DNA of 64,000 nt from Guillardia theta CCMP2712 (Eukaryota; Protista; Cryptophyta). Shown here one piece after another: positions 10,990 to 33,789 of this stretch. Position 1 is the stretch's first letter; every line of letters begins with the position of its first letter. The notes under the pieces are model-generated. The model was not told where the DNA came from. It ran no database searches and saw only the letters and a program-made list of their open reading frames with translations. A program made the translations under genes and the position numbers. The stretch is from NCBI RefSeq assembly GCF_000315625.1, contig NW_005434608.1, positions 145,449-209,448 of the forward strand, in the 5' to 3' direction.

Positions 10990-12467
10990 TTATGCCAGTA
11001 AAGCTGCTGCGTTTGCACAGCTGCACTCGCTAGCCTCCCATATCATTCGGATCAGATCGAGTTCCAACTCCAGAGCACTGAGACAGCTCCTCGTAGATCG
11101 TCCGAAGATCCCCAGCAGGAAACACGTTCTCCTCTCCTCCAGCACCTGCAAAACGCTCTCATCCACGCATTTCCCTTCTTTCCCCTCCTCCCTCCCTCCC
11201 TTCCCCCCTCTTCCTCAGCAACCCCCCCCCAACTTCCCCCCCCCCCCCCTTTCACCTCCAGCTCGACTCGGAGGTCCGCCCACGAGATACCCTCGAGCCG
11301 CGGCGGGGCACAGGGCATCTTCGACCAGTCCACCAAACTCGGGCTGACGTCGAGTCGCAGCTGCTCCAGGTGCCGCAGGTGCCGCAGGTTTCTTGCGATG
11401 CGCGTCACGCCCTCCTGCCCGATACCGTTGTTGTAAAGATCCACGTGCCTGAGCCTGGGGAGGCAGACGAAACACTCGGCCACGTGCCCAGCGCCCTCGT
11501 CGCCAATCTCGTTGAAACCCAAGTAGAGGGCCTCGAGGTTCGGGGTGGACTTCATGCTCCGGGCTAGGAAGAAGCAGCCTTCGCTCCCTATGTTGTTGTT
11601 GCAGATCCTCAGGTGCTCAAGGCGCGTGTTGAGGGCAAGGGCCCGGCCCAGGCTCGTCGCCCCCTCGTTCCCCACATGGTTGCACCCCATCTCCAACGAC
11701 ACTAGGGTAGGCTTGCACGCAAGATACTCCCCCAGCCGCTGAGCCCCGTCCTTGCGGATATTGTTGCCTCCTAGCTCGAGCGTCTTCAGCCCTCTGACGT
11801 GATGGAGAGCGTCGGTCAGCAGAGTCAGCCCGGCGTCACAGACCTGGTTGTTGAAGACGGAGAGGAACTCAAGGTTAACGAGATGGCGCAGGATGTCACT
11901 CAAGTGCCTGCAGCCCTCAGCCCCGATCTTGTTCCCTCTGACGTCGAGATGCACCAGCGACGGCATGTAAGGAAAGACTTCTCGAATGTACATGATCCCT
12001 TCCTCCATGTAGTTGGCACATCCCAGGTCCAGTCTCTGGACAAGCTTCAGGCTGTCGGCGTACTGACTGATGTCAAGAGAGACCCCCTGCTGCTCTTGCC
12101 TAGCCTCCTCTTGCAGCCCTGGAATGCTGGCAAGAACAGCTCGTTGATAGTGCAGCTTCTTAAGCACGTCGGAGATGGGCTCTCTGAATTTGGGGGCGCA
12201 GGTGCACCTTGAACACCAGAAGTCTTCGTCTTCCAAGAGCGACAGGTCATCATCCGAGCTCATGTCCATCTTTCTAGCTCCCTCTTCATCACTGCAAGAT
12301 AGTTCTGCCATGGCGATGTCGTCCTCGCATGCGCAGTCTCCGCACGACTCCTCAGCATGGGGCGTAGAAGCAGAAGAGGCAGGTGGCACCCTTGCACTGG
12401 CATGGCAAGCACTGCCATGACGCATGCTCGGGTCGGGTTGGCTTGTCTCAGGGAGGTTTCTCATCAT
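10990..12467 (-). CDS. Ribonuclease-inhibitor-type (28-aa) leucine-rich repeat protein
   Basis: About 8 repeats of LxxLxLxxNxIGxEGAxxLAxxL in ORF 11052-12806. A 3' intron (about 11146-11255) gives the C-terminus VLEERRTCFLLGIFGRSTRSCLSALELELDLIRMIW...LLA*. Start codon uncertain. Confidence 0.85.
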
Positions 12468-12975
12468 GATCTCATCGTCACCTCCTCCTCCTCCCTCCTC
12501 CTCCCTCCTCTCTCCTCTGCTGCTTCGCTCTCCTTCGCACCCATCGGGCATGTGCCCGCGGCCCTCGCCCTGGTGCCACCGACTGATGCGAGTCACCCTG
12601 TCCCAGGGCGGCTTGACTCCGGCGGCCCGCCGCCGGCCGGCGATCCGATCGGGCCGCCGGGCTCCGGGACAGAGGCCTGAGTCTCGGCGATCGGACTCTC
12701 TCCGACTCAGACCGTCGGACGGCCCGGACGGTCCGTCGTGCTCAGTAGACTTCGCCGGGCCGCCCGGCCGTCCTTCACTTGATGGAATCCCAACACTGCC
12801 ACACACATTGGTCTAGAGGACCATCTGATTTTGTTTCAAGTTACCTTGAAAACTGCCACCGTACAGTTGTATTACTATGACTCTGAGTAACTGAGTCAAA
12901 CTTGTAAGGTCACAAGTTCTCCCGGCACAAAACCAATTCCTTGCACCTGATGCTCTCGGCTTTCGAATGCCTCTC

Positions 12976-16853: not shown

Positions 16854-17566
16854 GTGCGGGAGGCTGTCTCAAGAGGAGGAGAAGGAGTCGGACGGGTCAC
16901 GCTGAAAAGAACGAATGCCTTTGGTTATAGGGGCTTGAAGCCGTGAGATGATGTCGTTGAAGTTCGTGAGGGGGGACGGACTAATTGAGCATACAAACTC
17001 AATTTTATTAGTATCAGGGAGAGGTGCGCCGTGAGAGGTGCGCCGTGACCGGGCTTATGAGATTATAACTCCTTTTTGCCAACCTCCGCAGGGACGCTCA
17101 TGGCACACCGAGGCAAGAGTGCGACATGCACAATCCGAATACGAGTGATTTCATTTATATCCGAGGCTGGTCCGATGGCGTCCGTGGACGTGATATAAAA
17201 CAGTTTGATGTCGGAGTTGCATCGAAGCTTCCTGAAGCATCTGGACGGATCTGGAGATTGATCTTAACCTTTGCGAAAAGCAGTGGTTTCAATTCATATC
17301 TTTGCTTTACTTTACGCACTGCCCCCCTTGATACCAGACCCTTTTTAAAGAGCCGCAGACTTTGTACTTCTCCTCCTCCTCCTCATATTCATATTCCTCC
17401 TCCTCCTCCTCCCCCTCATATATTCCTCCTTTTCCTCTTCACCATACATCTCCTTCTCGTCCTCCTCGCTTTAGTCCCCTTCTTTGTTACCATCCTCCAA
17501 TTCCGTCTCTAGCTTTTTGTGACCTCTCCTGCCTCTTGTTCTTGCTCCAACACACGCTGTGGTCTG

Positions 17567-18381
17567 ATGAGACGAACCGTCACCATCATGCCCCGTCCTC
17601 GCATCGGCACAGATGCCCTGACGATTCGCCAAGAGGTCGAGATCACCGTCGAAGTTCTTTCACCGCTTTTCGCGTCTCGACAAGAGAACGCTGCTCAAAC
17701 TCTGGTAAGCATGCTTTGCCATGTCAGCGCCCCTCCTTTCGTCTCATCCTAACTACCTGCTCTCTTTCCCAGGGCATATCGCTTTCAACCCTCAAGGCAG
17801 TCTGCAGGCAGCTCGGAATTTCACGTTGGCCGTATACGCGCAGAAGGAGGCGGGAGGCATCCTCCGAGAGTCGCGAAGGCTCCAACTCGTCCAGTCCGCT
17901 CAACGGAGATCACGGCATGTCAATAGAGCAGACGACTGGACAGACACAAGGGCAGCAGCAACAGGCGTTCATGGTAGCGGCAGAGGAGCAACAGGAGCAT
18001 TGCCAGGAAGAAGCGTGCTCGGTTGTTGTTGAACACACCACCGAAGCTATGTCTCATGGAATTGGCGGCGATTCCTCCCCTCCCCAACCTCCTGCCTCGT
18101 TTCCGTACGACCCTGTCACCGACTTCAGACCGAATATGCACGTGGGGGGGAGCAGCATGGCATGGCAGGGGGATGAGAGCACTTGGGACGAGCTTCTTGC
18201 TGGGGAGCAGGAGGCATCGGGCCGGTCTAATTCTCAAACTGAGTTAGGATGTAAGGCCTCCCTGGGGACGAGAGGAACAGGTGCTGCTCTGAGCAGCGAA
18301 CTTGACCGGATCGACCCAGGCTGGCTGTCCTGGTACCTGCATGGCAACGAGGAGTCAGAGGAAACGTGGCAGGGAACATGA
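17567..18381 (+). CDS. RWP-RK domain transcription factor (paralogue 3), intron 17705-17772
   Basis: MRRTVTIMPRPR...ITVEVLSPLFASRQENAAQTL|GISLSTLKAVCRQLGISRWPYTRRR. Confidence 0.92.
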
Positions 18382-18445: not shown

Positions 18446-19267
18446 NNNNNNNNNNNNNNNNNNNNNNNNNNNNNNNNNNNNNNNNNNNNNNNNNNNNNNN
18501 NNNNNNNNNNNNNNNNNNNNNNNNNNNNNNNNNNNNNNNNNNNNNNNNNNNNNNNNNNNNNNNNNNNNNNNNNNNNNNNNNNNNNNNNNNNNNNNNNNNN
18601 NNNNNNNNNNNNNNNNNNNNNNNNNNNNNNNNNNNNNNNNNNNNNNNNNNNNNNNNNNNNNNNNNNNNNNNNNNNNNNNNNNNNNNNNNNNNNNNNNNNN
18701 NNNNNNNNNNNNNNNNNNNNNNNNNNNNNNNNNNNNNNNNNNNNNNNNNNNNNNNNNNNNNNNNNNNNNNNNNNNNNNNNNNNNNNNNNNNNNNNNNNNN
18801 NNNNNNNNNNNNNNNNNNNNNNNNNNNNNNNNNNNNNNNNNNNNNNNNNNNNNNNNNNNNNNNNNNNNNNNNNNNNNNNNNNNNNNNNNNNNNNNNNNNN
18901 NNNNNNNNNNNNNNNNNNNNNNNNNNNNNNNNNNNNNNNNNNNNNNNNNNNNNNNNNNNNNNNNNNNNNNNNNNNNNNNNNNNNNNNNNNNNNNNNNNNN
19001 NNNNNNNNNNNNNNNNNNNNNNNNNNNNNNNNNNNNNNNNNNNNNNNNNNNNNNNNNNNNNNNNNNNNNNNNNNNNNNNNNNNNNNNNNNNNNNNNNNNN
19101 NNNNNNNNNNNNNNNNNNNNNNNNNNNNNNNNNNNNNNNNNNNNNNNNNNNNNNNNNNNNNNNNNNNNNNNNNNNNNNNNNNNNNNNNNNNNNNNNNNNN
19201 NNNNNNNNNNNNNNNNNNNNNNNNNNNNNNNNNNNNNNNNNNNNNNNNNNNNNNNNNNNNNNNNNNC
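18446..19267. other. Assembly gap (about 820 N)
   Basis: Run of N flanked by (GCAGA)n and (CAT)n. Confidence 0.99.
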
Positions 19268-24344: not shown

Positions 24345-26018
<1,674 letters not shown>

Positions 26019-26309: not shown

Positions 26310-27347
26310 TCAAATCTGGTCGATAACCGCAGCAAGACACATCACCTACCAACAGCGAGGAACAAGCATAGTCAGGTTGTCTTGAACCCACAGAAACGAG
26401 AAGCGGGGTAAGGTGCGGAGGGCAGAAGCATGCTCGACCATAGACGAGGAGAAGCAAGGATGAAGAAGGATGGAGGAAGGAGTAGGCGAAGGAGCGGGAA
26501 CAGGAGCGGGTCGGGCGGGAATAGCAGGAGCAGGAGGCGCAGGAGGAGCAGGAGCAGGATGAGCAGGATGAGCAGGAGCAGCAGGAGCAATAGAGGTTGA
26601 AACTCACCAACGCTACGTCCAGTCCTGGCGCCACCTCTATCATATACATCTTGTCCTCAGTCGGGATGTGCCTTGTCGACAACTTCCTGCTCTGCATGCA
26701 CTTCATGTCAGACATCGACCCTGCTAAGACAAGATGCTGAGCTCACTGCTCGGGCTACTCGTCGTCCTCCCTCCTGCGAGCAATCCTCGATGTAGTACTC
26801 CTTGGCCTGTAGGCTGCCTCGGACCGCTAGAATGGGAGCGGGGAACGAGATTTCATCGGTCATGGAGGGGAAGGGCTCTGGCAGGATGTTCACGAGGAGG
26901 AGGCCCGAATCATCAGTCCTTCCTCTCCCTTCCTTCCTCGCAACTCGTGCGCGAACTCGGTCTGACACGAGAAGAAACCACTCGTCGGAGGATGGAGAAC
27001 GCCTGAGGATATGCTGGGGAGGAGGGTTTCAGGGGCAAGAAACTATACAGGCTCCCACTTACCGCATGATCAAGGCCTCCAGGAAGCATCAGTTTCCCTG
27101 TATCTCCTCCAACCACGAGGAACAGACTTACACCATTGATATCCTTCACCATCTTCGGCTCCTTTCCCCTACCGATCCCTTCCTCCCACATGCAAAACAT
27201 CGGCGCGTCATTGATGAAGTGAACTCTGGTGTCCTGCAAGGCTGTGATCCTTCTGAGAGGCATGCGTACTTCGATGTCGTCTCCTTCCTCCCCCCTCCTC
27301 TCCCTCTCTCGGCCACAGCACGCGCTGCTTCCTCCCTGCCCCATCAC
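26310..27347 (-). CDS. LURP-one/Tubby-C-like (Tub_2) protein, possibly N-acylated
   Basis: VRGSLQAKEYYIED...RVARA and DKMYMIEVAPGLDVAL-VMCLAAVIDQI* match the LURP-one C-terminal pattern. N-terminus MGQGGSSACCG. Confidence 0.6.
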
Positions 27348-27622: not shown

Positions 27623-29380
27623 ATGCAGGCTACGAAGAGGGGAGGGAGAAAGATTCTTGTAAGCGCGCTGGTGGCGATGGCGATGTGCCGAAGCTTCGCC
27701 GGCGCCATCCATACAACTCCCGCCGGCTTCATGGCGCCTCCAGCGTTGAGAGCGATCGGAGCCGAGGGGAAGCATGTAGTTTGCCACCTGAAGAAGAAGG
27801 ATCCAGGGCCGGGTACAGGAGAGGTGCTGGAGAGCCAGGCGGACCTGCTGACTAGGAGGAGGCTTCTGAGTGCTGCTGCTGGAATCTTGATCCTCCCTGT
27901 CCTCGACATGTTCTTCGGTGCCAAGGCAGCGCATGCGGCTGCAGGCACAGCCAAGGGGGAGCGGGGCCCTCCTGCGGACCTTGGCGAGGTCCTCAAGAAG
28001 GCAGCGACTAGGGCCATAGGAGGAGGAAGGTCGGGAGCAGCAGCAGGCGTCTTGCAAGTCCTGTCGCTCATGTGGCTGAGGACGACGATGAACTACCAGT
28101 ACAGGTATGGAGGGAGCATGTCCGAGGTCATGGCGAAACTGTACAAAGAGGGAGGGGTAGGAAGGTTCTACCGGGGGGTAGGATTCGCGCTGCTCCAGCA
28201 GCCCCTCTCTCGCTTCGGAGACACAGCAGCGAACGCAGGCATGGTGGTCCTCCTCGAGAGCTTCGACAGCACACGGGAACTTCCTCCCTTCGTCAAGACT
28301 GTCTGCGCAAGCGCTGCAGCTGCCCTGTGGAGGATATGGTTGATGCCTATCGACTCGTTCAAGACGAACATGCAGGTGTGTGGGTGGCGATGAGCAAAGT
28401 CAGGAGGAGGAGGAGGAGGAGGAGGAGGAGGAGATTGAAAGGATGGAGCAATCCAGCAGCAGTAGCAGCATCTGCAGATGACATCACATACAGGTGGAGG
28501 AGGAAGGTTTCCAGAAGCTCCTTGCCAAGATCAGAGCTCGTGGTGTTGGAGTTCTCTTTGAAGGAAGTGCAGCAACGCTCGGAAGGTACGGAAGGAGCAG
28601 TACAGGAGGCAGGGGTAGCTGACAGGATAAGCGAGAGTAAGAGAGGCAGCAAGGAAGTGGGCTCCAGGGTGTTGCAGCAAGGACAGATGCTGGAGAGGAA
28701 GGAGAGTCGAATGACGGGAGAGTAGAGGAAGCAAAAGTCTTACTCTCGTCCTTGCAGCTCGTTCGTCGGTCACTATCCTTGGTTTGCCACCTTCAACACG
28801 CTACAGTCCATGATCCCCCAGGCTGGTGAGTGGAGGAAACAGGGGATGAGGGCAGCGGCTGACGTTTGTAAAGATAACAACCTGGCTGTCAAGCTCTTGA
28901 GGAACGCTTGGATCGGACTCTGTGCGTCAGGTGAGCTTGCTCCTCTGCTGGGCAGGTTCCCTTGACAAGCCGTTGGCAGCGGTTTCGGACTGCTGCTCTA
29001 ACTCTCTCCGTGTCATCAAGACGACCAAGCAAACGTCACCGCAGCGAATCTCCTACGTCGAGGCTGTTCAGGTTCGGAGGAAGCGGGAGAGAAGAGGGGG
29101 CTGTTGGGACGAGGATGACGACGAGACGAAGGAGGAGGAGCTGGGATGGTGGTTGTGGTAGACGAGGAGGAGGAAGCTGTTCAGAAGTGCTGACTCGATT
29201 CTCTCAGAATGTGATGCAGGTGGATGGTATCAAGGGGCTCCTTGGCCGCGGCCTCGGCACTCGTCTTGTTACCAACGGCCTCCAGGTACGGAACATGCCG
29301 GCATCTTGACAGTGACTGGGGGAGAGCAGGGGATGCTGTTCTCTGTGGTCTGGCGCTTGTTCGACGAGTACTGGAAGTGA
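27623..29380 (+). CDS. Mitochondrial carrier family protein with a long plastid/thylakoid-type leader, 7 exons
   Basis: Three carrier repeats: MWLRTTMNYQYRYG..GVGRFYRG, MPIDSFKTNMQV..GVGVLFEG, NSLRVIKTTKQT..GIKGLLGRGL. Confidence 0.9.
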
Positions 29381-29488: not shown

Positions 29489-32400
29489 TCATGACGTTTT
29501 GGACTCGGCGAGCGGGCGGATTCCTGCGGGGTCCTCGTCAGTGTCCTTCCTAAAAGTGTCCGACTGAGAAGAGAACGCACGGGAGCTATCCGCTGCGAGC
29601 CAGACGTCGTAGCGGATGGACCATCCTTTGAAGTGCACGAGCACCCGCTGAAAGGCGACTGTCAGCTCCGAGGAGATGAGATGGGGTGTGGAGGGGGAAT
29701 AGCGCGCAGGATAGCAGATGAAGGCAAGGGGGGAGGAGAAGGAAGAGAGGGAGCGGGAAGGAGGAGTGAATAGGAGGAGGAGCAAGAGGGAGGAGGACCT
29801 GCGTCCTGAGGCTGTTATCTATGCTCTTGATTTCTGCCTGGTAGAAGGCTCCACGATCTTCACATTCGACGTTCTGCCCAACGAAGAAGCGACTCTTGGA
29901 AGTCTGCGCAATGGATCACAAGGGGGATGAACAAAGTGGAGGAGAGGATGGAGGGAAGGGAAGGGAAGAACGAAGGCTAGAAGAAACTGAGAATGAAAGG
30001 AAGGAGAGAAAGGAAGGATGAAGCACTGAGCTCCAGGAGGAATTCCTGACCTTGTGCTCGAACCGGCTGAGGTAGATCTCATCCCTGGTATCCTTGTCGG
30101 TGATCCCAGGGATCGAGCTCCTCCTCGACCCGCTGTCTCCTACGCTCTCCGCGTCCACCTCCCTCTTTCGCGCCTTCTTGCCTGAGCTCTGCGTTTCCTT
30201 GACAGCCTCCTCGGCCTCTCGCCCTGCCCCTTCTCCTTTGCTTCTGATCTTGGTGTTCTTGATGTGTGTGAACTTGTATCCCCTCCTCTTCTTCTTCCCG
30301 CGCGCTGAAGGAGGTTGTGCCTCGCGACTCTTGCTCTCCTCTCCTCCTGCCTTCCCATCGCTTCCCGCCGTTTTTGCAAGCTTGTAAGGACGCACGTGAT
30401 CGCTCGATCCGCTCGACCGCGCGATCGCTAGCTTCGCGTCCTCCTCTCGCTTCTTCGTCTCCTCCGCATCCCGGCGAATTGGCGGCCTTCCCCTCTTCCG
30501 CTTCAGCGGCTCCTTCCGCAGGATGATCGGATCCTTGTGCCTTCCCTTGCTCCTGATCGCCACCACCTACACACAGATCAACCTCACACTATGTATGCAG
30601 GAGGGATTTAAGTAGGAGGGGGGGGAGGGGGTGGGGGGCGTTACCTGCGGCATGGCCGAGCACAAGTGGCACATGTAGTTGTAGTCCGTGTCGTAGCAGA
30701 TGTCACGAGCCTCGATCGCCTCATCGAAGCACACGAGCGGGTCCTCCCGCATGCAGCAAGTGTGCTGCCAGCTACAGCACCACTCGCAGAAGCACCACTT
30801 GCAATCCCACAGCATCTCCTCAGGTGGGTGGTTCTCCCGGCCACACCGGCACACCACCGGGCACGCGAACTCCCAGTCGTACTTGTTGCACTTGCCGTCG
30901 GCGCATCTGCTGTTGCACTTGTGCGAGGCAGCCTGACCGGTCCAGTGTTAGGAGAGAGGAGGGGTGGAAGGCGGGTTGAGGCAGGATGTCAAGCAACAGC
31001 CAGAGAAAGGGGGAGAGAACGAGAGGCATGCAGGTTGAGGTAGAGGCGCGGAGGAGAGAGGAGGAGGGAGGGGAGCGAAGAGGAAGTGAGGGGAGGGGAG
31101 GGGAGGGGAGGAAAGAAGGAACTTACAGCATCGGCTGCGTCATTCAGATTTCTCCTCTGACGTGCTGTCAGCTCACGGACAGAGTCTTCCGTCTCCTCCG
31201 AAACGTGATGGCTCGCCCTCTTCATCGCCTTCCACAGCTTCGATTCTTCCCTCCACTCCTTGCTGCCTCCCCGCTGTATCTCGTCCTTGGGCGAGGCTCC
31301 GTTGGTCGACCTGAAAACCTGCCTAACACTTCCACTGCTGCCGCCAAGGCGGTGCAGCAACGCATCAGCCACGTCCAAGATTCTTCCTCGCACAGTCGCT
31401 GGCGCCGGATGCGCCTTCTTCAGGCTCTCCGACTTGATGAGGAGCTGCCGTACCAGTCTGTGGATCATCATCATCGTGGAGAACTTGCCGTGACGCATGT
31501 CGTTGAACTGCAGGTGGAGGTCGTTGAGCAGCGTGCATAGGTGCGCGCACTCGTTCAGGGTGAACTCGTGCTTATCCTCGTCCACGTTCACCAGGGGGTC
31601 TTCCTCGAGGGTCTCCTCCCGATGCTTGCTGCTCGACTTACTCTTCCCACTCCCGGCCTTGTCCTTGGAGTACTGTACCATGAAGATCGACCCCATCTCA
31701 CTGTTCCGCTGCATGTACTTGTTCATCGCCTCAACTGCCCGCTGGTGCCTTTCATGGCTCTGGATGGTCAGCTCTCGGCTTATCCTCCTCCCCTCCGAGC
31801 GCGAAGGCCCGCTATCAGCAGGGGGAGTCACTTCAGCTCTCGCCCTCTTGCTCGTTTCTGGTCTGCTCGGAGTGGCTGATGACGTCAGTTTCGCATCTCC
31901 TCCCGACAAGGCGGCTTCCAGCGCTCGAAGCATCAGCCCTCCTGGGAACTGCGGGACGTGCCGCAACGACATGTCAGGCCCGAAAAGCGACCGGGGAAGA
32001 CTCCTATCCTGCTCCCCATCCTCGTCCCGACGGGCGTTGCTGTCCCAGTCCGTGATGATCCCCTCCTGCTTAGCAACGTTCAGGAGCTTCGCATACCACG
32101 AGTCGAGCTGTGCAGGAGTGGGGCAATGTTGATGCAGCGGCCGCATGTGGAAGATGTAATCGTGATGCAGATCGTTGGGCGGCATGCTCCATATAAAAAG
32201 GGCTTCGAACCCTCGCTTCTTCACAGCATCCAGGTATCCAAGTAGAACTCTGCGGACAACCTCCTTCCTCTCTCGGGTGCACTCTTCAGGGTCTGAGCAG
32301 GTGCTACTGCTGCAGACATCCCTCCCCCGCAGGCAGCACGAGGCCTTGTGGTAAAGCTGGACGGAGTCGATGTAGGAGATGTAAGCCTTGTTCTTGTTCG

Positions 32401-33789
32401 GCTCGGGAGCGTCTGATCCAAACTCTGCCACCACCAGTCCCAGAAATGCTACATCGGTTTCGTCCTCACACTCAACGAAGCACATGATGTTCTTCAGCAG
32501 GTATGGGAAGTTCTGTTTGCCGAAACGTGCAGTGAAGCCTGGCGTGCTCTCCTGCATTCTCTTCACGTTGCTGACCGTCCTGATGATCACAGGGCAGCTC
32601 TTCTCCAAGCCCTTGAACACCTTCTTCGCCACATAGCTCTGCATGTGCTGCGACAGGGGGCTCTCTTTCATGTCCCTTGCCCTCAGGTTCAGGTACAGGC
32701 AGTTCAGCTGTGGTTTCGCTAGCGAGTTCCACTTGTCTTGACAGTCTCTGTGGATGCATCGAGGAGGAATGTCTCCATACATCTCCCGATTGTATCGAAC
32801 GCAACGGTCGTGGTACTTCCTGCCGCAGAAGGGGCATTCGCACATAGATTCCACATCTTGCTCCACCACTTTGGAAGTGAACTCCGTTGCAAGTATGACC
32901 TTCGATTTCGCCTCGTCCGGGGGGGCAGCAACCTTGGCTCCCTCTGTCTCTTCCTTGGGAGGAGTGTACATTCCATCACGTTGAACCACCTGGACGAGAA
33001 GGAGTCACATAAAACAGCAACCCTGCCTAGACGTCCTCAAGGGGCTTCTAACCTGGAAGCAATAGATGCACATGTTGACGATTGACACGGGGTGACCAGG
33101 CTCGTGCTCGGGTGGATCGCAATGTTGCCAGAAGGGCCACCCTTGCTTGATAATACCCTCACACCTGTTTGTCAAGAAGTGACTTTGGGTTCTGATTGAG
33201 AGGTCAAGTGGTCTACAACCTGCTACATATGAGTGCGATGGTCTTGGCGTTTCCAAGTTTCTTGGCAGGGTTGAAGCACATAGCACAAGGATCTTTCCAC
33301 TCATCCTCGTTGCTGTCTACCTTGGTATTCCGCGTTGAGATCCGTTCAGTGGAGGCGACAACCTTGGTTTCCGCTGCAGACTTACTCTGAGAGCACCGTC
33401 AGGCATAAACATGCAACAAGCGCCGGAAGAGCGTCTGCACCTCATCATCGCTGCTCCAAGTCGGAGATAACCTATCGGTCTGACGACGAATTCTCTTTCC
33501 ACTCCCAACAAGTACCTGAAAGAAGCTGTGAGTCGATATAAGGCATTCAGAGGGTGAAGATACCTCCTTCATGGGGTCACTGCCGGGCAAATATCGCTTT
33601 ACACTTCGCCGAGATCGTTTCCTTTCACGAGGAGGCTTCTTAGGAGAAAAGGATGGCCTCTTCTTGGCACGTTTCGGTCCAGAATTCTCGTATTCGCCTT
33701 CGCTCTCGTCATCCACTTCCCCACTACTTTCTTCCTCTTGGTCCTCATCACTTGAATCGTCATCCTCATCATCGTCGTCCTGATCATCA

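What the first reader, a model, noticed from the sequence alone, without database searches (positions are those of the whole stretch)
27623..27937. Mitochondrial-carrier-family protein with a tripartite signal, transit and twin-arginine leader
Seen: MQATKRGGRKILVSALVAMAMCRSFAG (signal-like), then TPAGFMAPPALRA.. (transit-like with Phe), then LLTRRRLLSAAAGILILPVLDMFFGAKAAHA-A (RR, hydrophobic core, AxA peptidase site), directly before the carrier domain. Known: RR..h..AxA is the thylakoid Tat signal of lumenal proteins, and carriers have both termini on one side of the membrane. Inference: a carrier retargeted to the thylakoid with its termini in the lumen, which would be a candidate lumen metabolite transporter. 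That matters in cryptophytes, whose lumen holds the phycobiliprotein antenna.
Basis: partly seen in the sequence, partly recalled or inferred. Interest (0 to 1): 0.7.

Follow-up and report, generated by a model that had tools for sequence, protein, structure and literature searches.

The report
Carrier protein with thylakoid Tat leader
A cryptophyte gene for the recently named plastid carrier MCFc begins with a three-part address label ending in a conserved twin-arginine thylakoid signal; the diatom protein published as an envelope transporter has the same signal, so this carrier probably sits in the photosynthetic membrane facing the lumen.

Summary
Window 27623-27937 (+) encodes 105 residues: an ER signal peptide, a transit-peptide-like stretch, and T-RRR-LL, an uncharged core and AHA|A. 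They run straight into a mitochondrial-carrier (SLC25) domain. The window is Guillardia theta nuclear DNA. The gene has 7 exons (27623-29380). The public model GUITHDRAFT_158297 starts at M96, inside the leader, and so misses it.

The carrier belongs to the MCFc family, described in 2024-2025 in Phaeodactylum. It is 51% identical to MCFc itself (B5Y3N0).

The new point is that the twin-arginine domain is conserved. It is present in the cryptophyte orthologues and in about 90% of evaluable diatom orthologues. The consensus is S-R-R-x-F-L, with A-x-A about 24 residues later. The published Phaeodactylum MCFc carries it too (S57-R58-R59-F-F-L ... A78-N79-A80|V81). In 51 aligned diatom leaders the two arginines are the only invariant residues.

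Neither MCFc paper mentions a thylakoid or Tat signal, and one places the protein at the envelope.

Best reading: a thylakoid-membrane carrier with both termini in the lumen. No localisation or Tat dependence was tested here. A 40 kDa immunoblot band in Phaeodactylum argues against cleavage of the signal.

The parts
27623..29380 (+). Whole coding region of the G. theta plastid-type MCFc carrier gene. Seven exons: 27623-28375, 28494-28585, 28758-28825, 28874-28930, 28980-29071, 29208-29285, 29330-29380 (stop TGA at 29378-29380). About 396 codons.
   Evidence: Each exon, translated on its own, is an exact substring of the database protein P0002 (GUITHDRAFT_158297). All introns are GT-AG. The exons were not joined.
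27623..27694 (+). ER-type signal peptide, residues 1-24. Proposed cleavage is C-R-S|F, which leaves F25 at +1.
   Evidence: Basic n-region and a 12-residue core with mean hydropathy 2.62. The ATG and this segment are kept in the relative L001. The cleavage site is by inspection only.
27695..27844 (+). Stromal transit-peptide-like region, residues 25 to about 74. Its end is not defined.
   Evidence: Variable in sequence and length among cryptophyte orthologues, with large indels. The equivalent stretch is predicted disordered in the diatom precursor model.
27845..27937 (+). Lumenal targeting domain of Tat type, residues 75-105: T77-RRR (27854-27862)-LL, uncharged core L81-L93, K101 in the c-region, A103-H104-A105 (27929-27937), predicted cut before A106.
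   Evidence: Fits Z-R-R-x-Phi-Phi plus AxA (for the consensus). L75, R78, R79, G87, P92, G99 and AAHAA are invariant in cryptophyte orthologues. The same module is found in diatoms. The public gene model starts inside it, at M96.
27938..28375 (+). Start of the mature carrier: a short N-tail, helix 1 with the family motif LMWLRTTMNYQYRYGG, helix 2, and helix 3 with the only canonical signature, PIDSFK.
   Evidence: Pfam PF00153 hit. AlphaFold2 model of P0002 with mean pLDDT 88.8. Foldseek top hits are ADP/ATP carrier and UCP1, TM-score 0.65-0.7.
28494..29380 (+). Exons 2-7: the rest of carrier repeats 2 and 3 (helices 4-6), with the degenerate third signature SNSLRVIKTTKQ.

Best explanation
The gene encodes the Guillardia theta orthologue of the plastid carrier MCFc, a very divergent member of the SLC25 mitochondrial-carrier fold. 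It is made as a precursor with a tripartite leader.

Proposed route:
1. The signal peptide takes the protein into the ER-continuous outermost plastid membrane. It is cut so that F25 becomes the new N-terminus.
2. The transit peptide carries the protein across the inner three membranes into the stroma.
3. The third domain (T-RRR-LL, an uncharged core, AHA|A) is a thylakoid twin-arginine signal. It binds the thylakoid Tat receptor and inserts as a hairpin with carrier helix 1.
4. The thylakoid processing peptidase cuts after AHA on the lumenal face.

The mature carrier of about 31.6 kDa would then sit in the thylakoid membrane. Its N-terminus, and after six helices its C-terminus, would be in the lumen, and its matrix-type face would point to the stroma. 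It would exchange a still unknown solute between stroma and lumen.

Shown here: the sequence, its coding status, the fold, the family, and the conservation of the RR/AxA module in two algal lineages, including the published Phaeodactylum MCFc.

Inferred: every transport step, the cleavage, the orientation and the substrate.
For: - Leader anatomy and carrier domain.
- The leader is under coding constraint, and the annotated start M96 is not conserved.
- The family is MCFc. BLASTP to P0343 (XP_002185866.1, UniRef100_B5Y3N0) gives 51% identity over 282 residues, E 2e-93. PMC12645085 identifies B5Y3N0 as MCFc.
- In a tree of 140 family members, every leader with a post-transit hydrophobic domain lies outside an 84-row clade of leaderless or mitochondrial-type members. 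That clade has SH-aLRT 93. The window's protein groups with three RR-bearing cryptophyte-like proteins (support 96).
- The logo of 100 unique signals reads S 67%, R, R, x, F 65%, L 55%. A.A is present in 86 of 100, at a median of 24 residues after RR.
- A MAFFT alignment of 51 diatom precursors has R66 and R67 as the only invariant columns in the leader. The 51 were chosen from sequences already scored as RR-bearing.
- A blind tally that locates the hydrophobic core first counts RR 78, KR 3 and no basic residue 5.
- Phaeodactylum MCFc itself reads S57-R58-R59-F-F-L ... A78-N79-A80|V81.
- G. theta is known to use exactly this signal, transit and Tat-domain architecture for 14 lumenal phycoerythrin alpha subunits (PMC5784005).
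- The published full-length MCFc-GFP signal fills the plastid homogeneously and co-localises with PsbA. I read that as fitting thylakoids at least as well as the envelope.
- The knockout lowers the dark thylakoid membrane potential by about 25%.
- In the model of a diatom precursor, the signal helix has pLDDT of about 60. A 23-residue linker with pLDDT below 50 separates it from the carrier.
Against: - There is no experimental localisation, cleavage or Tat test for any member.
- Giustini et al. state an envelope location. They detect a band of about 40 kDa, which matches the uncleaved or signal-peptide-only-cleaved protein (41.5 or 39.0 kDa). The product expected after cutting at ANA is about 33 kDa.
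- Tat normally carries folded soluble or cofactor domains. None of the five recognised Tat substrate classes is a cleavable N-terminal RR signal in front of a six-helix membrane protein.
- A related, largely haptophyte clade has the hydrophobic core and AxA but no RR, so RR is not indispensable for the family.
- A few diatom sequences lack RR.
- The canonical carrier gating motifs are missing in repeats 1 and 3, so even transport activity is an assumption.
Confidence: 0.55

Rival explanations
1. Thylakoid carrier, but Tat-independent. The cleavable hydrophobic domain and helix 1 insert as a helical hairpin, either spontaneously or with the help of Alb3 or SRP. This is how CFoII, PsbW and PsbX insert in plants (my own knowledge). 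The RR would act only as a positive-inside or Sec-avoidance determinant.
For: The largely haptophyte clade keeps signal peptide, transit peptide, hydrophobic core and AxA, but has acidic residues where RR would be. A few diatoms lack RR and have more hydrophobic cores. There is no precedent for a polytopic Tat passenger behind a cleavable N-terminal signal.
Against: The two arginines are the only invariant leader residues in 51 diatom precursors, and the flanks follow the full S-R-R-x-F-L consensus. That is more constraint than a generic positive charge would need. The KR variants are the same ones tolerated by known Tat substrates (tolerance is my own knowledge).
Confidence: 0.2
2. Uncleaved signal-anchor. 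The RR and hydrophobic segment stay attached as a seventh helix, like the Rieske protein (Tat class III). The N-terminus would then be stromal and the C-terminus lumenal.
For: The 40 kDa band in Phaeodactylum is closer to an uncleaved form. Some sequences of the related, largely haptophyte clade have a conserved extra helix (GEKxGxAxIAV..GY.LGAAGVTP) without AxA, or an N-terminal membrane helix without a signal peptide.
Against: A.A is present in 86 of 100 signals at the expected distance. AAHAA is invariant in cryptophytes. The core is short and rich in G, A, S and T. The signal helix is low-confidence and separated from the carrier by a disordered linker in the model.
Confidence: 0.12
3. Inner-envelope carrier, as published for Phaeodactylum MCFc. 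It would exchange metabolites between plastid and cytosol. The hydrophobic domain would be a stop-transfer or re-insertion signal for the envelope, or would have no sorting role.
For: This is the authors' interpretation. The knockout changes 2-oxoglutarate, Glu and Arg pools and the coupling of photosynthesis to respiration.
Against: No ring-like envelope signal is described. GFP is homogeneous across the plastid and co-localises with PsbA. A conserved textbook Tat motif has no known role in envelope sorting (my own knowledge). Neither MCFc paper examined the presequence beyond signal and transit peptide.
Confidence: 0.1
4. The leader is not part of the protein. Translation would start at M96, as in the NCBI model, or the upstream ORF would be untranslated.
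For: The public model GUITHDRAFT_158297 starts at M96. No transcript data were available here.
Against: M96 is Ile in the close relative, whereas ATG 27623 is kept. DNA identity jumps from 74-80% to 94-98% at the ATG, with no frameshift. More distant cryptophyte orthologues encode the same three-part leader in one ORF with the carrier.
Confidence: 0.03

Closest known systems
MCFc of Phaeodactylum tricornutum (Phatr3_J46742, UniProt B5Y3N0). Sources: Giustini et al. 2025, PMC12645085; Liu et al. 2024, bioRxiv 10.1101/2024.12.16.628690.
   Same: Same carrier subfamily: 51% identity, the same family-specific motifs, and the plastid-type branch of the tree. Same leader plan: signal peptide, transit peptide, S/T-RR-x-hydrophobic, AxA.
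   Different: Different lineage (cryptophyte rather than diatom). The published work describes only a bipartite plastid signal and proposes an envelope location. The thylakoid-type third domain is not mentioned in either paper.
Arabidopsis thylakoid ATP/ADP carrier TAAC/PAPST1 (At5g01500; cited in PMC9546453).
   Same: A mitochondrial-carrier-family protein reported in thylakoid membranes. It is the precedent for a carrier that serves the lumen.
   Different: A different carrier subfamily (adenine-nucleotide type). As far as I know it has an ordinary chloroplast transit peptide and no RR lumenal domain; this was not tested here. It is also reported at the envelope.
Tripartite presequences of cryptophyte phycoerythrin alpha subunits (PMC5784005).
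   Same: Identical leader architecture in the same organism: signal peptide with AXA|F, transit peptide, then RR, hydrophobic core and AXA.
   Different: The passenger there is a small soluble lumenal protein, probably carried as a folded complex. Here it is a six-helix membrane protein.
Tat-integrated membrane proteins: Rieske protein (class III), actinobacterial Rieske and other dual Sec-Tat proteins (class IV), tail-anchored Tat substrates (PMC13673990, PMC5449189, PMC3471235).
   Same: An RR signal used to place a membrane protein in an energy-coupling membrane.
   Different: In those proteins the RR segment is uncleaved, or internal, or followed by a folded cofactor domain with at most one anchor. 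Here it is N-terminal, apparently cleavable, and followed by six hydrophobic helices with no globular domain.

Membership tests
SLC25 / mitochondrial carrier family | Match to Pfam PF00153 (Mito_carr) above the curated cut-off | tested here: met
   31.8 bits against 22.3 on exon 1, residues 129-196. A profile of 50 homologues hits UCP2, GGC1, UCP1 and AAC at E 1e-7 to 1e-4. The single sequence finds nothing in the PDB.
SLC25 / mitochondrial carrier family | Three tandem repeats giving six transmembrane helices and three short matrix helices | tested here: met
   AlphaFold2 model of P0002: pLDDT 88.8, pTM 0.85. Foldseek top hits are bovine and yeast ADP/ATP carriers and human UCP1, probability 1.0, TM-score 0.55-0.72.
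SLC25 / mitochondrial carrier family | Signature P-x-[DE]-x-x-[KR]-x-[KR] on helices 1, 3 and 5 (the matrix salt-bridge network) | tested here: not met
   Only repeat 2 keeps P, D and K (PIDSFKTNMQ). Repeat 1 reads MWLRTTMNYQ and repeat 3 reads SLRVIKTTKQ. The same holds across the whole MCFc family, where W56, R58, T59 and N62 are invariant and Y63 is nearly invariant. I therefore file it as a divergent member by fold and Pfam. Canonical alternating-access transport is not assured.
MCFc subfamily | Close similarity to Phatr3_J46742 / B5Y3N0 and only weak similarity to other carriers | tested here: met
   BLASTP of P0343 against P0002: 51% identity over 282 residues, E 2e-93. P0343 is XP_002185866.1 / UniRef100_B5Y3N0. 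There is no phmmer hit to any solved carrier.
MCFc subfamily | Placement in the plastid-type branch rather than the mitochondrial-type branch (the Phatr3_J46612-like group) | tested here: met
   The window's protein lies outside the 84-row clade (SH-aLRT 93) that holds heterotroph, green-algal and leaderless members. It sits in a cryptophyte clade with support 96-97. The backbone among plastid-type clades is weak (48).
MCFc subfamily | Plastid localisation of the protein | not testable with these tools
   Shown only for Phaeodactylum by GFP. Nothing exists for G. theta.
Twin-arginine (Tat) signal peptides | Z-R-R-x-Phi-Phi motif at the border of the n-region and h-region | tested here: met
   T77-R78-R79-R80-L81-L82. 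The consensus is quoted from PMC13673990. Orthologues read S-R-R-x-F-L.
Twin-arginine (Tat) signal peptides | Uncharged h-region of moderate hydrophobicity followed by an A-x-A peptidase site | tested here: met
   Core L81-L93. The best 15-residue hydropathy is 2.13, against 2.62 for the ER signal core. AHA lies at residues 103-105 and K101 is in the c-region. A.A is present in 86 of 100 orthologue signals.
Twin-arginine (Tat) signal peptides | Conservation of RR among orthologues whose leaders are otherwise variable | tested here: met
   RR is the only invariant pair in 51 diatom leaders, chosen from sequences already scored as RR-bearing. It is invariant in 5 cryptophyte leaders. The blind tally gives RR 78, KR 3, none 5.
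Twin-arginine (Tat) signal peptides | Transport that depends on the Tat machinery and the pH gradient and is lost with RR-to-KK | not testable with these tools
   Needs import assays or mutant leaders.
Twin-arginine (Tat) signal peptides | Passenger is a folded soluble or cofactor-bearing domain (the usual substrate classes I-V) | tested here: not met
   The passenger is a six-helix carrier with no globular domain. It matches none of the five classes listed in PMC13673990. The signal therefore looks like a Tat signal, while the substrate would be of a new kind.
Bipartite presequence of complex red plastids | N-terminal ER signal peptide followed by a transit peptide that begins with F/Y/W/L at +1 | tested here: inconclusive
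   The signal-peptide features are clear by composition. F25 is at +1 only if cleavage is C-R-S|F. The other cryptophyte orthologues have AxA|L. No SignalP or ASAFind was available.

The most novel reading that the evidence does not exclude
MCFc would be a thylakoid-membrane carrier, not an envelope carrier, in cryptophytes and diatoms. It would be inserted by the Tat pathway through a cleavable N-terminal RR signal. That would make it the first polytopic six-helix membrane protein known to use such a signal, effectively a sixth class of Tat substrate. It would also be a direct stroma-lumen solute exchanger, whose loss explains the lower dark thylakoid membrane potential of the diatom knockout.
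Probability: 0.35. Interest if true: 0.85.

Novelty: new variant of a known kind. Interest (0 to 1): 0.7.

Why it matters
- **Lumen transport.** Very few solute transporters of the thylakoid lumen are known in any alga. None of the carrier family is known in diatoms or cryptophytes, two major groups of marine phytoplankton.
- **Published phenotype.** If the signal works as it reads, a protein just published as a plastid-envelope link between chloroplast and mitochondrion would instead act across the thylakoid membrane. That would change how its knockout phenotype (lower electron transport, 25% lower dark membrane potential) is interpreted.
- **Tat pathway.** It would give Tat research a new kind of substrate: a polytopic membrane protein behind a cleavable RR signal.
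- **Directly testable.** A knockout, an antibody and GFP lines already exist in Phaeodactylum.
- **Gene model.** The G. theta model GUITHDRAFT_158297 lacks its first 95 codons, so this protein would be missed in predictions of plastid or lumen targeting.

Tried and rejected
- **PDB by sequence.** phmmer with the single sequence found no hit. Only the profile and the fold search place the protein among carriers.
- **Finding Phaeodactylum MCFc.** It did not appear by name in the top-120 lists of three word searches. I found it through the members of cluster P0123.
- **Mature N-terminus.** The Thalassiosira N-terminome (PMC3774753) has no carrier-family entry in its supplements.
- **Prior reports.** Literature searches for a Tat or thylakoid signal on MCFc or on any diatom or cryptophyte carrier found nothing in the library. 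Subscription journals are not covered.
- **Phycobiliprotein link.** Rejected, because diatoms share the signal.
- **M96 as the start.** Rejected.
- **Genomic context.** The neighbours are unrelated.
- **Substrate.** I did not attempt to infer it from contact-point residues. The alignment to solved carriers is too weak (12-18% identity).
- **Big representative search.** Not used. The operators called it costly, and the word search left nothing open.
- **Joined protein.** Whole-domain work used the database protein P0002, which each exon matches exactly.
- **Source of the window.** It is Guillardia theta DNA, not human.
Full report
**What is there.** The window is nuclear DNA of the cryptophyte Guillardia theta CCMP2712. 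A database protein, P0002 (GUITHDRAFT_158297, 301 aa), is 100% identical to the reading frame at the finding. From the first in-frame ATG at 27623, the + strand encodes 251 residues up to a GT donor at 28376.
- a basic n-region and a 12-residue hydrophobic core (residues 1-24);
- a polar, Pro/Ala/Gly/Lys-rich stretch;
- then T77-R78-R79-R80-L81-L82, an uncharged core up to L93, K101, and A103-H104-A105 before A106.

Pfam's Mito_carr model matches residues 129-196 of the same exon above its curated cut-off. I traced six more exons (28494-28585, 28758-28825, 28874-28930, 28980-29071, 29208-29285, 29330-29380). All have GT-AG borders. Each, translated on its own, is an exact substring of P0002. 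Whole-domain analyses used P0002 by reference.

**Is the leader real and more than chance?** The public model starts at Met96, inside the hydrophobic core of the third leader domain, and so lacks all targeting information. A 2-kb metagenome contig from a close relative (L001) settles the question:
- DNA identity to the window is 74-80% in the 220 bases before the ATG, 94-98% through leader and carrier, and 68% with indels in intron 1.
- The ATG at 27623 is kept, and the reading frame is unbroken.
- Met96 is Ile in the relative.

Differences in the leader fall 5/3/8 on codon positions 1/2/3. In the carrier part of the exon they fall 4/2/12. The leader is therefore coding, but under weaker constraint.

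A pattern of RR, a 13-residue uncharged hydrophobic core and A.A occurs once in 63,860 residues of six-frame ORFs of the window. I take that single hit to be this site, because the same function finds it in the leader, but the scan did not print its position. The pattern arises in 0.2% of shuffles of the leader's own residues.

**What the protein is.** The AlphaFold2 model of P0002, built with 50 homologues, is confident (pLDDT 88.8, pTM 0.85). It shows six long helices and three short ones in three repeats. Foldseek finds only ADP/ATP carriers, UCP1 and the carrier-like subunits of Tetrahymena complex IV, with TM-scores up to about 0.7.

By sequence the protein is far from solved carriers. 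phmmer finds nothing, and a family profile reaches UCP2 only at E 1e-7. The canonical P-x-[DE]-x-x-[KR] signature survives only in repeat 2. Repeats 1 and 3 carry family-specific, nearly invariant motifs instead.

This is the MCFc family, named in 2024-2025 by two groups working on Phaeodactylum tricornutum:
- Three paralogues go to the plastid (Phatr3_J46742, which is MCFc proper, UniProt B5Y3N0), the endomembranes (J42874) and the mitochondrion (J46612).
- Plastid-type homologues are reported in diatoms and cryptomonads.
- There are no land-plant or red-algal members, and the substrate is unknown.

I recovered B5Y3N0 as P0343 from the cluster of hit P0123. It is 51% identical to the G. theta protein over 282 residues (E 2e-93).

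In my tree of 140 members, an 84-row clade (SH-aLRT 93) holds the sequences without a hydrophobic leader: choanoflagellate, ichthyosporean, thraustochytrid, green-algal and other members. The G. theta protein falls outside that clade, in a supported cryptophyte clade. The diatom, brown-algal, chromerid and haptophyte-containing plastid-type clades also lie outside it.

**The new point: the third leader domain is conserved.**
- *Cryptophytes.* The other cryptophyte-like orthologues (P0001, P0003-P0005) have unrelated transit regions with large indels. They keep L75, R78, R79, G87, P92, G99 and the block A-A-H-A-A invariant.
- *Diatoms.* Of 114 diatom orthologues, 90 scored as signal peptide with F at +1, then transit region, then [ST]-R-R-x-F-L, core and A-x-A. 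Most of the rest are N-terminally truncated models that still show SRRxFL.
- *Logo.* From 100 unique signals it reads S 67%, R, R, x, F 65%, L 55%. A.A is present in 86, at a median of 24 residues after RR. This is the Berks consensus S/T-R-R-x-F-L-K and the general Z-R-R-x-Phi-Phi.
- *Alignment.* In a plain MAFFT alignment of 51 full-length diatom precursors, the only invariant columns in the roughly 119-residue leader are the two arginines. The 51 were picked from sequences already scored as RR-bearing, so this is not independent of the scoring.
- *Blind tally.* A procedure that first finds the hydrophobic core and then looks upstream gives RR 78, KR 3 and no basic residue 5. In another 8 it picked the ER signal instead; these have RR.
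- *The published protein.* Phaeodactylum MCFc reads signal peptide (..ALS|F), transit region, S57-R58-R59-F-F-L-G, core, A78-N79-A80|V81.

G. theta is already known to use exactly this three-part leader for 14 lumenal phycoerythrin alpha subunits (PMC5784005).

**What the literature says and does not say.** Neither MCFc paper contains the words thylakoid signal, Tat, twin-arginine or lumen in this sense. One of them trimmed the presequences before alignment. Giustini et al. state an envelope location in the abstract. Their data, however, are a GFP signal spread through the plastid that co-localises with PsbA, is homogeneous in expansion microscopy and is excluded from the pyrenoid. In my reading that fits thylakoids at least as well.

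Liu et al. fused the first 87 residues to GFP and saw fluorescence 'within the stroma'. Those 87 residues contain the whole signal peptide, transit peptide and RR domain. A lumenal location would therefore be expected, and confocal imaging could not tell the two apart.

The knockout has lower electron transport and a dark thylakoid membrane potential about 25% lower. A thylakoid carrier could produce this directly.

Against cleavage: the antibody detects a band of about 40 kDa. The calculated masses are 41.5 kDa for the full protein, 39.0 kDa after signal-peptide removal and about 33 kDa after cutting at ANA.

**Mechanism and its weak points.** The most economical reading has four steps:
1. 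ER entry and signal-peptide removal.
2. Transit to the stroma.
3. Recognition of the RR signal at the thylakoid, and insertion of the signal core together with carrier helix 1 as a hairpin.
4. Cutting after AHA in the lumen.

With six helices, both termini would be lumenal and the matrix-type face stromal. This is the same topology, relative to the stroma, as an envelope carrier would have.

The AlphaFold2 model of a diatom precursor shows the signal helix at low confidence. A disordered 23-residue linker separates it from the carrier, as expected for a detachable presequence. This is weak evidence.

The weak points are real:
- Tat usually moves folded soluble domains. The 2026 review's five substrate classes include no cleavable N-terminal RR signal ahead of a polytopic protein.
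- A related clade, whose named members are haptophytes (Prymnesium, Emiliania), has signal peptide, transit peptide, an acidic n-region, a more hydrophobic core and HAxPxxA, but no RR.
- Other sequences recovered with that clade have a conserved extra helix, or an N-terminal membrane helix without a signal peptide.

The shared ancestral trait may therefore be an extra N-terminal hydrophobic segment, with Tat dependence particular to diatoms and cryptophytes. Because the gating motifs are degenerate, even transport activity is an assumption. The substrate is unknown. By analogy with the plant thylakoid carrier TAAC, and from the membrane-potential phenotype, I would first test an electrogenic exchange of an anionic metabolite or nucleotide. 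This is only a guess.

**Verdict.** The thylakoid-targeting inference is well founded by comparison and extends to diatoms, but it is untested. The tie to the cryptophyte phycobiliprotein antenna is not supported. The carrier family and its plastid location are already known. The conserved thylakoid Tat-type domain, its presence on the published MCFc, and the resulting challenge to the envelope model appear to be new within the literature I could search. The window is not human.

Noticed in passing
window 27908-27910 (Met96) and the public model GUITHDRAFT_158297: The NCBI/JGI gene model starts at Met96, inside the hydrophobic core of the lumenal targeting domain. It therefore lacks 95 codons of leader. 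The close relative has Ile at that position.
   Followed up: yes
window 26600-27300: This block upstream of the carrier gene is 92-100% identical (mostly 96% or more) to the relative's contig L001, which is about as conserved as the carrier exon. The overlapping ORF on the minus strand (26913-27347, 144 aa) has no Pfam match. It is probably an exon of an unannotated or unknown neighbouring gene.
   Followed up: partly
window 18447-19266: Assembly gap (a run of N), flanked by microsatellites: (GCAGA)n before it, and (CAT)n and (GTCCTC)n after it. It accounts for the apparent dip in G+C at 18-20 kb.
   Followed up: yes
proteins P0235-P0333 (largely haptophyte clade, e.g. Prymnesium P0273/P0289/P0327, Emiliania P0097): Plastid-type MCFc relatives here have a signal peptide, a transit peptide, an acidic n-region, a strongly hydrophobic core and HAxPxxA, but no RR. 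One subgroup has a conserved helix, GEKxGxAxIAV..GY.LGAAGVTP, without AxA. Another has no signal peptide but a single N-terminal membrane helix. An extra N-terminal hydrophobic segment may be the ancestral trait of the non-mitochondrial branch.
   Followed up: partly
proteins P0209, P0220, P0222 (diatoms); P0146, P0188, P0196, P0207: A few diatom orthologues have KR instead of RR. A few have no basic residue before the core, and two of those have markedly more hydrophobic cores (hydropathy 2.8-2.95 against a median of 2.06). This is the pattern expected for a switch from Tat to Sec or spontaneous insertion.
   Followed up: partly
proteins P0009, P0011, P0013, P0029, P0070, P0086: Some mitochondrial-type members of the family carry N-terminal EF-hand domains or His-rich extensions. 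This recalls the calcium-regulated carriers.
   Followed up: no
whole MCFc family (alignment A2); window 28070-28100 and 28995-29030: The matrix salt-bridge signature is lost in repeats 1 and 3. It is replaced by motifs that are nearly invariant across the family (LMWLRT.MNYQYRYG and SNS[LI]RV.KTTKQT). The gating mechanism may therefore differ from that of classical carriers.
   Followed up: partly
window 30989-32989 (-), 24354-25583 (+), 11052-12806 (-), 17362-18381 (+): Neighbouring ORFs match a p300/CBP-type histone acetyltransferase (HAT_KAT11), an M24 metallopeptidase, a leucine-rich-repeat protein and an RWP-RK domain. None has an evident functional link to the carrier gene.
   Followed up: partly
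window 28395-28435 and 29100-29180: Purine-rich (GGA/GAG)n runs lie inside introns 1 and 5 of the carrier gene. Intron 1 is the least conserved segment against the relative (68% identity, with indels).
   Followed up: no
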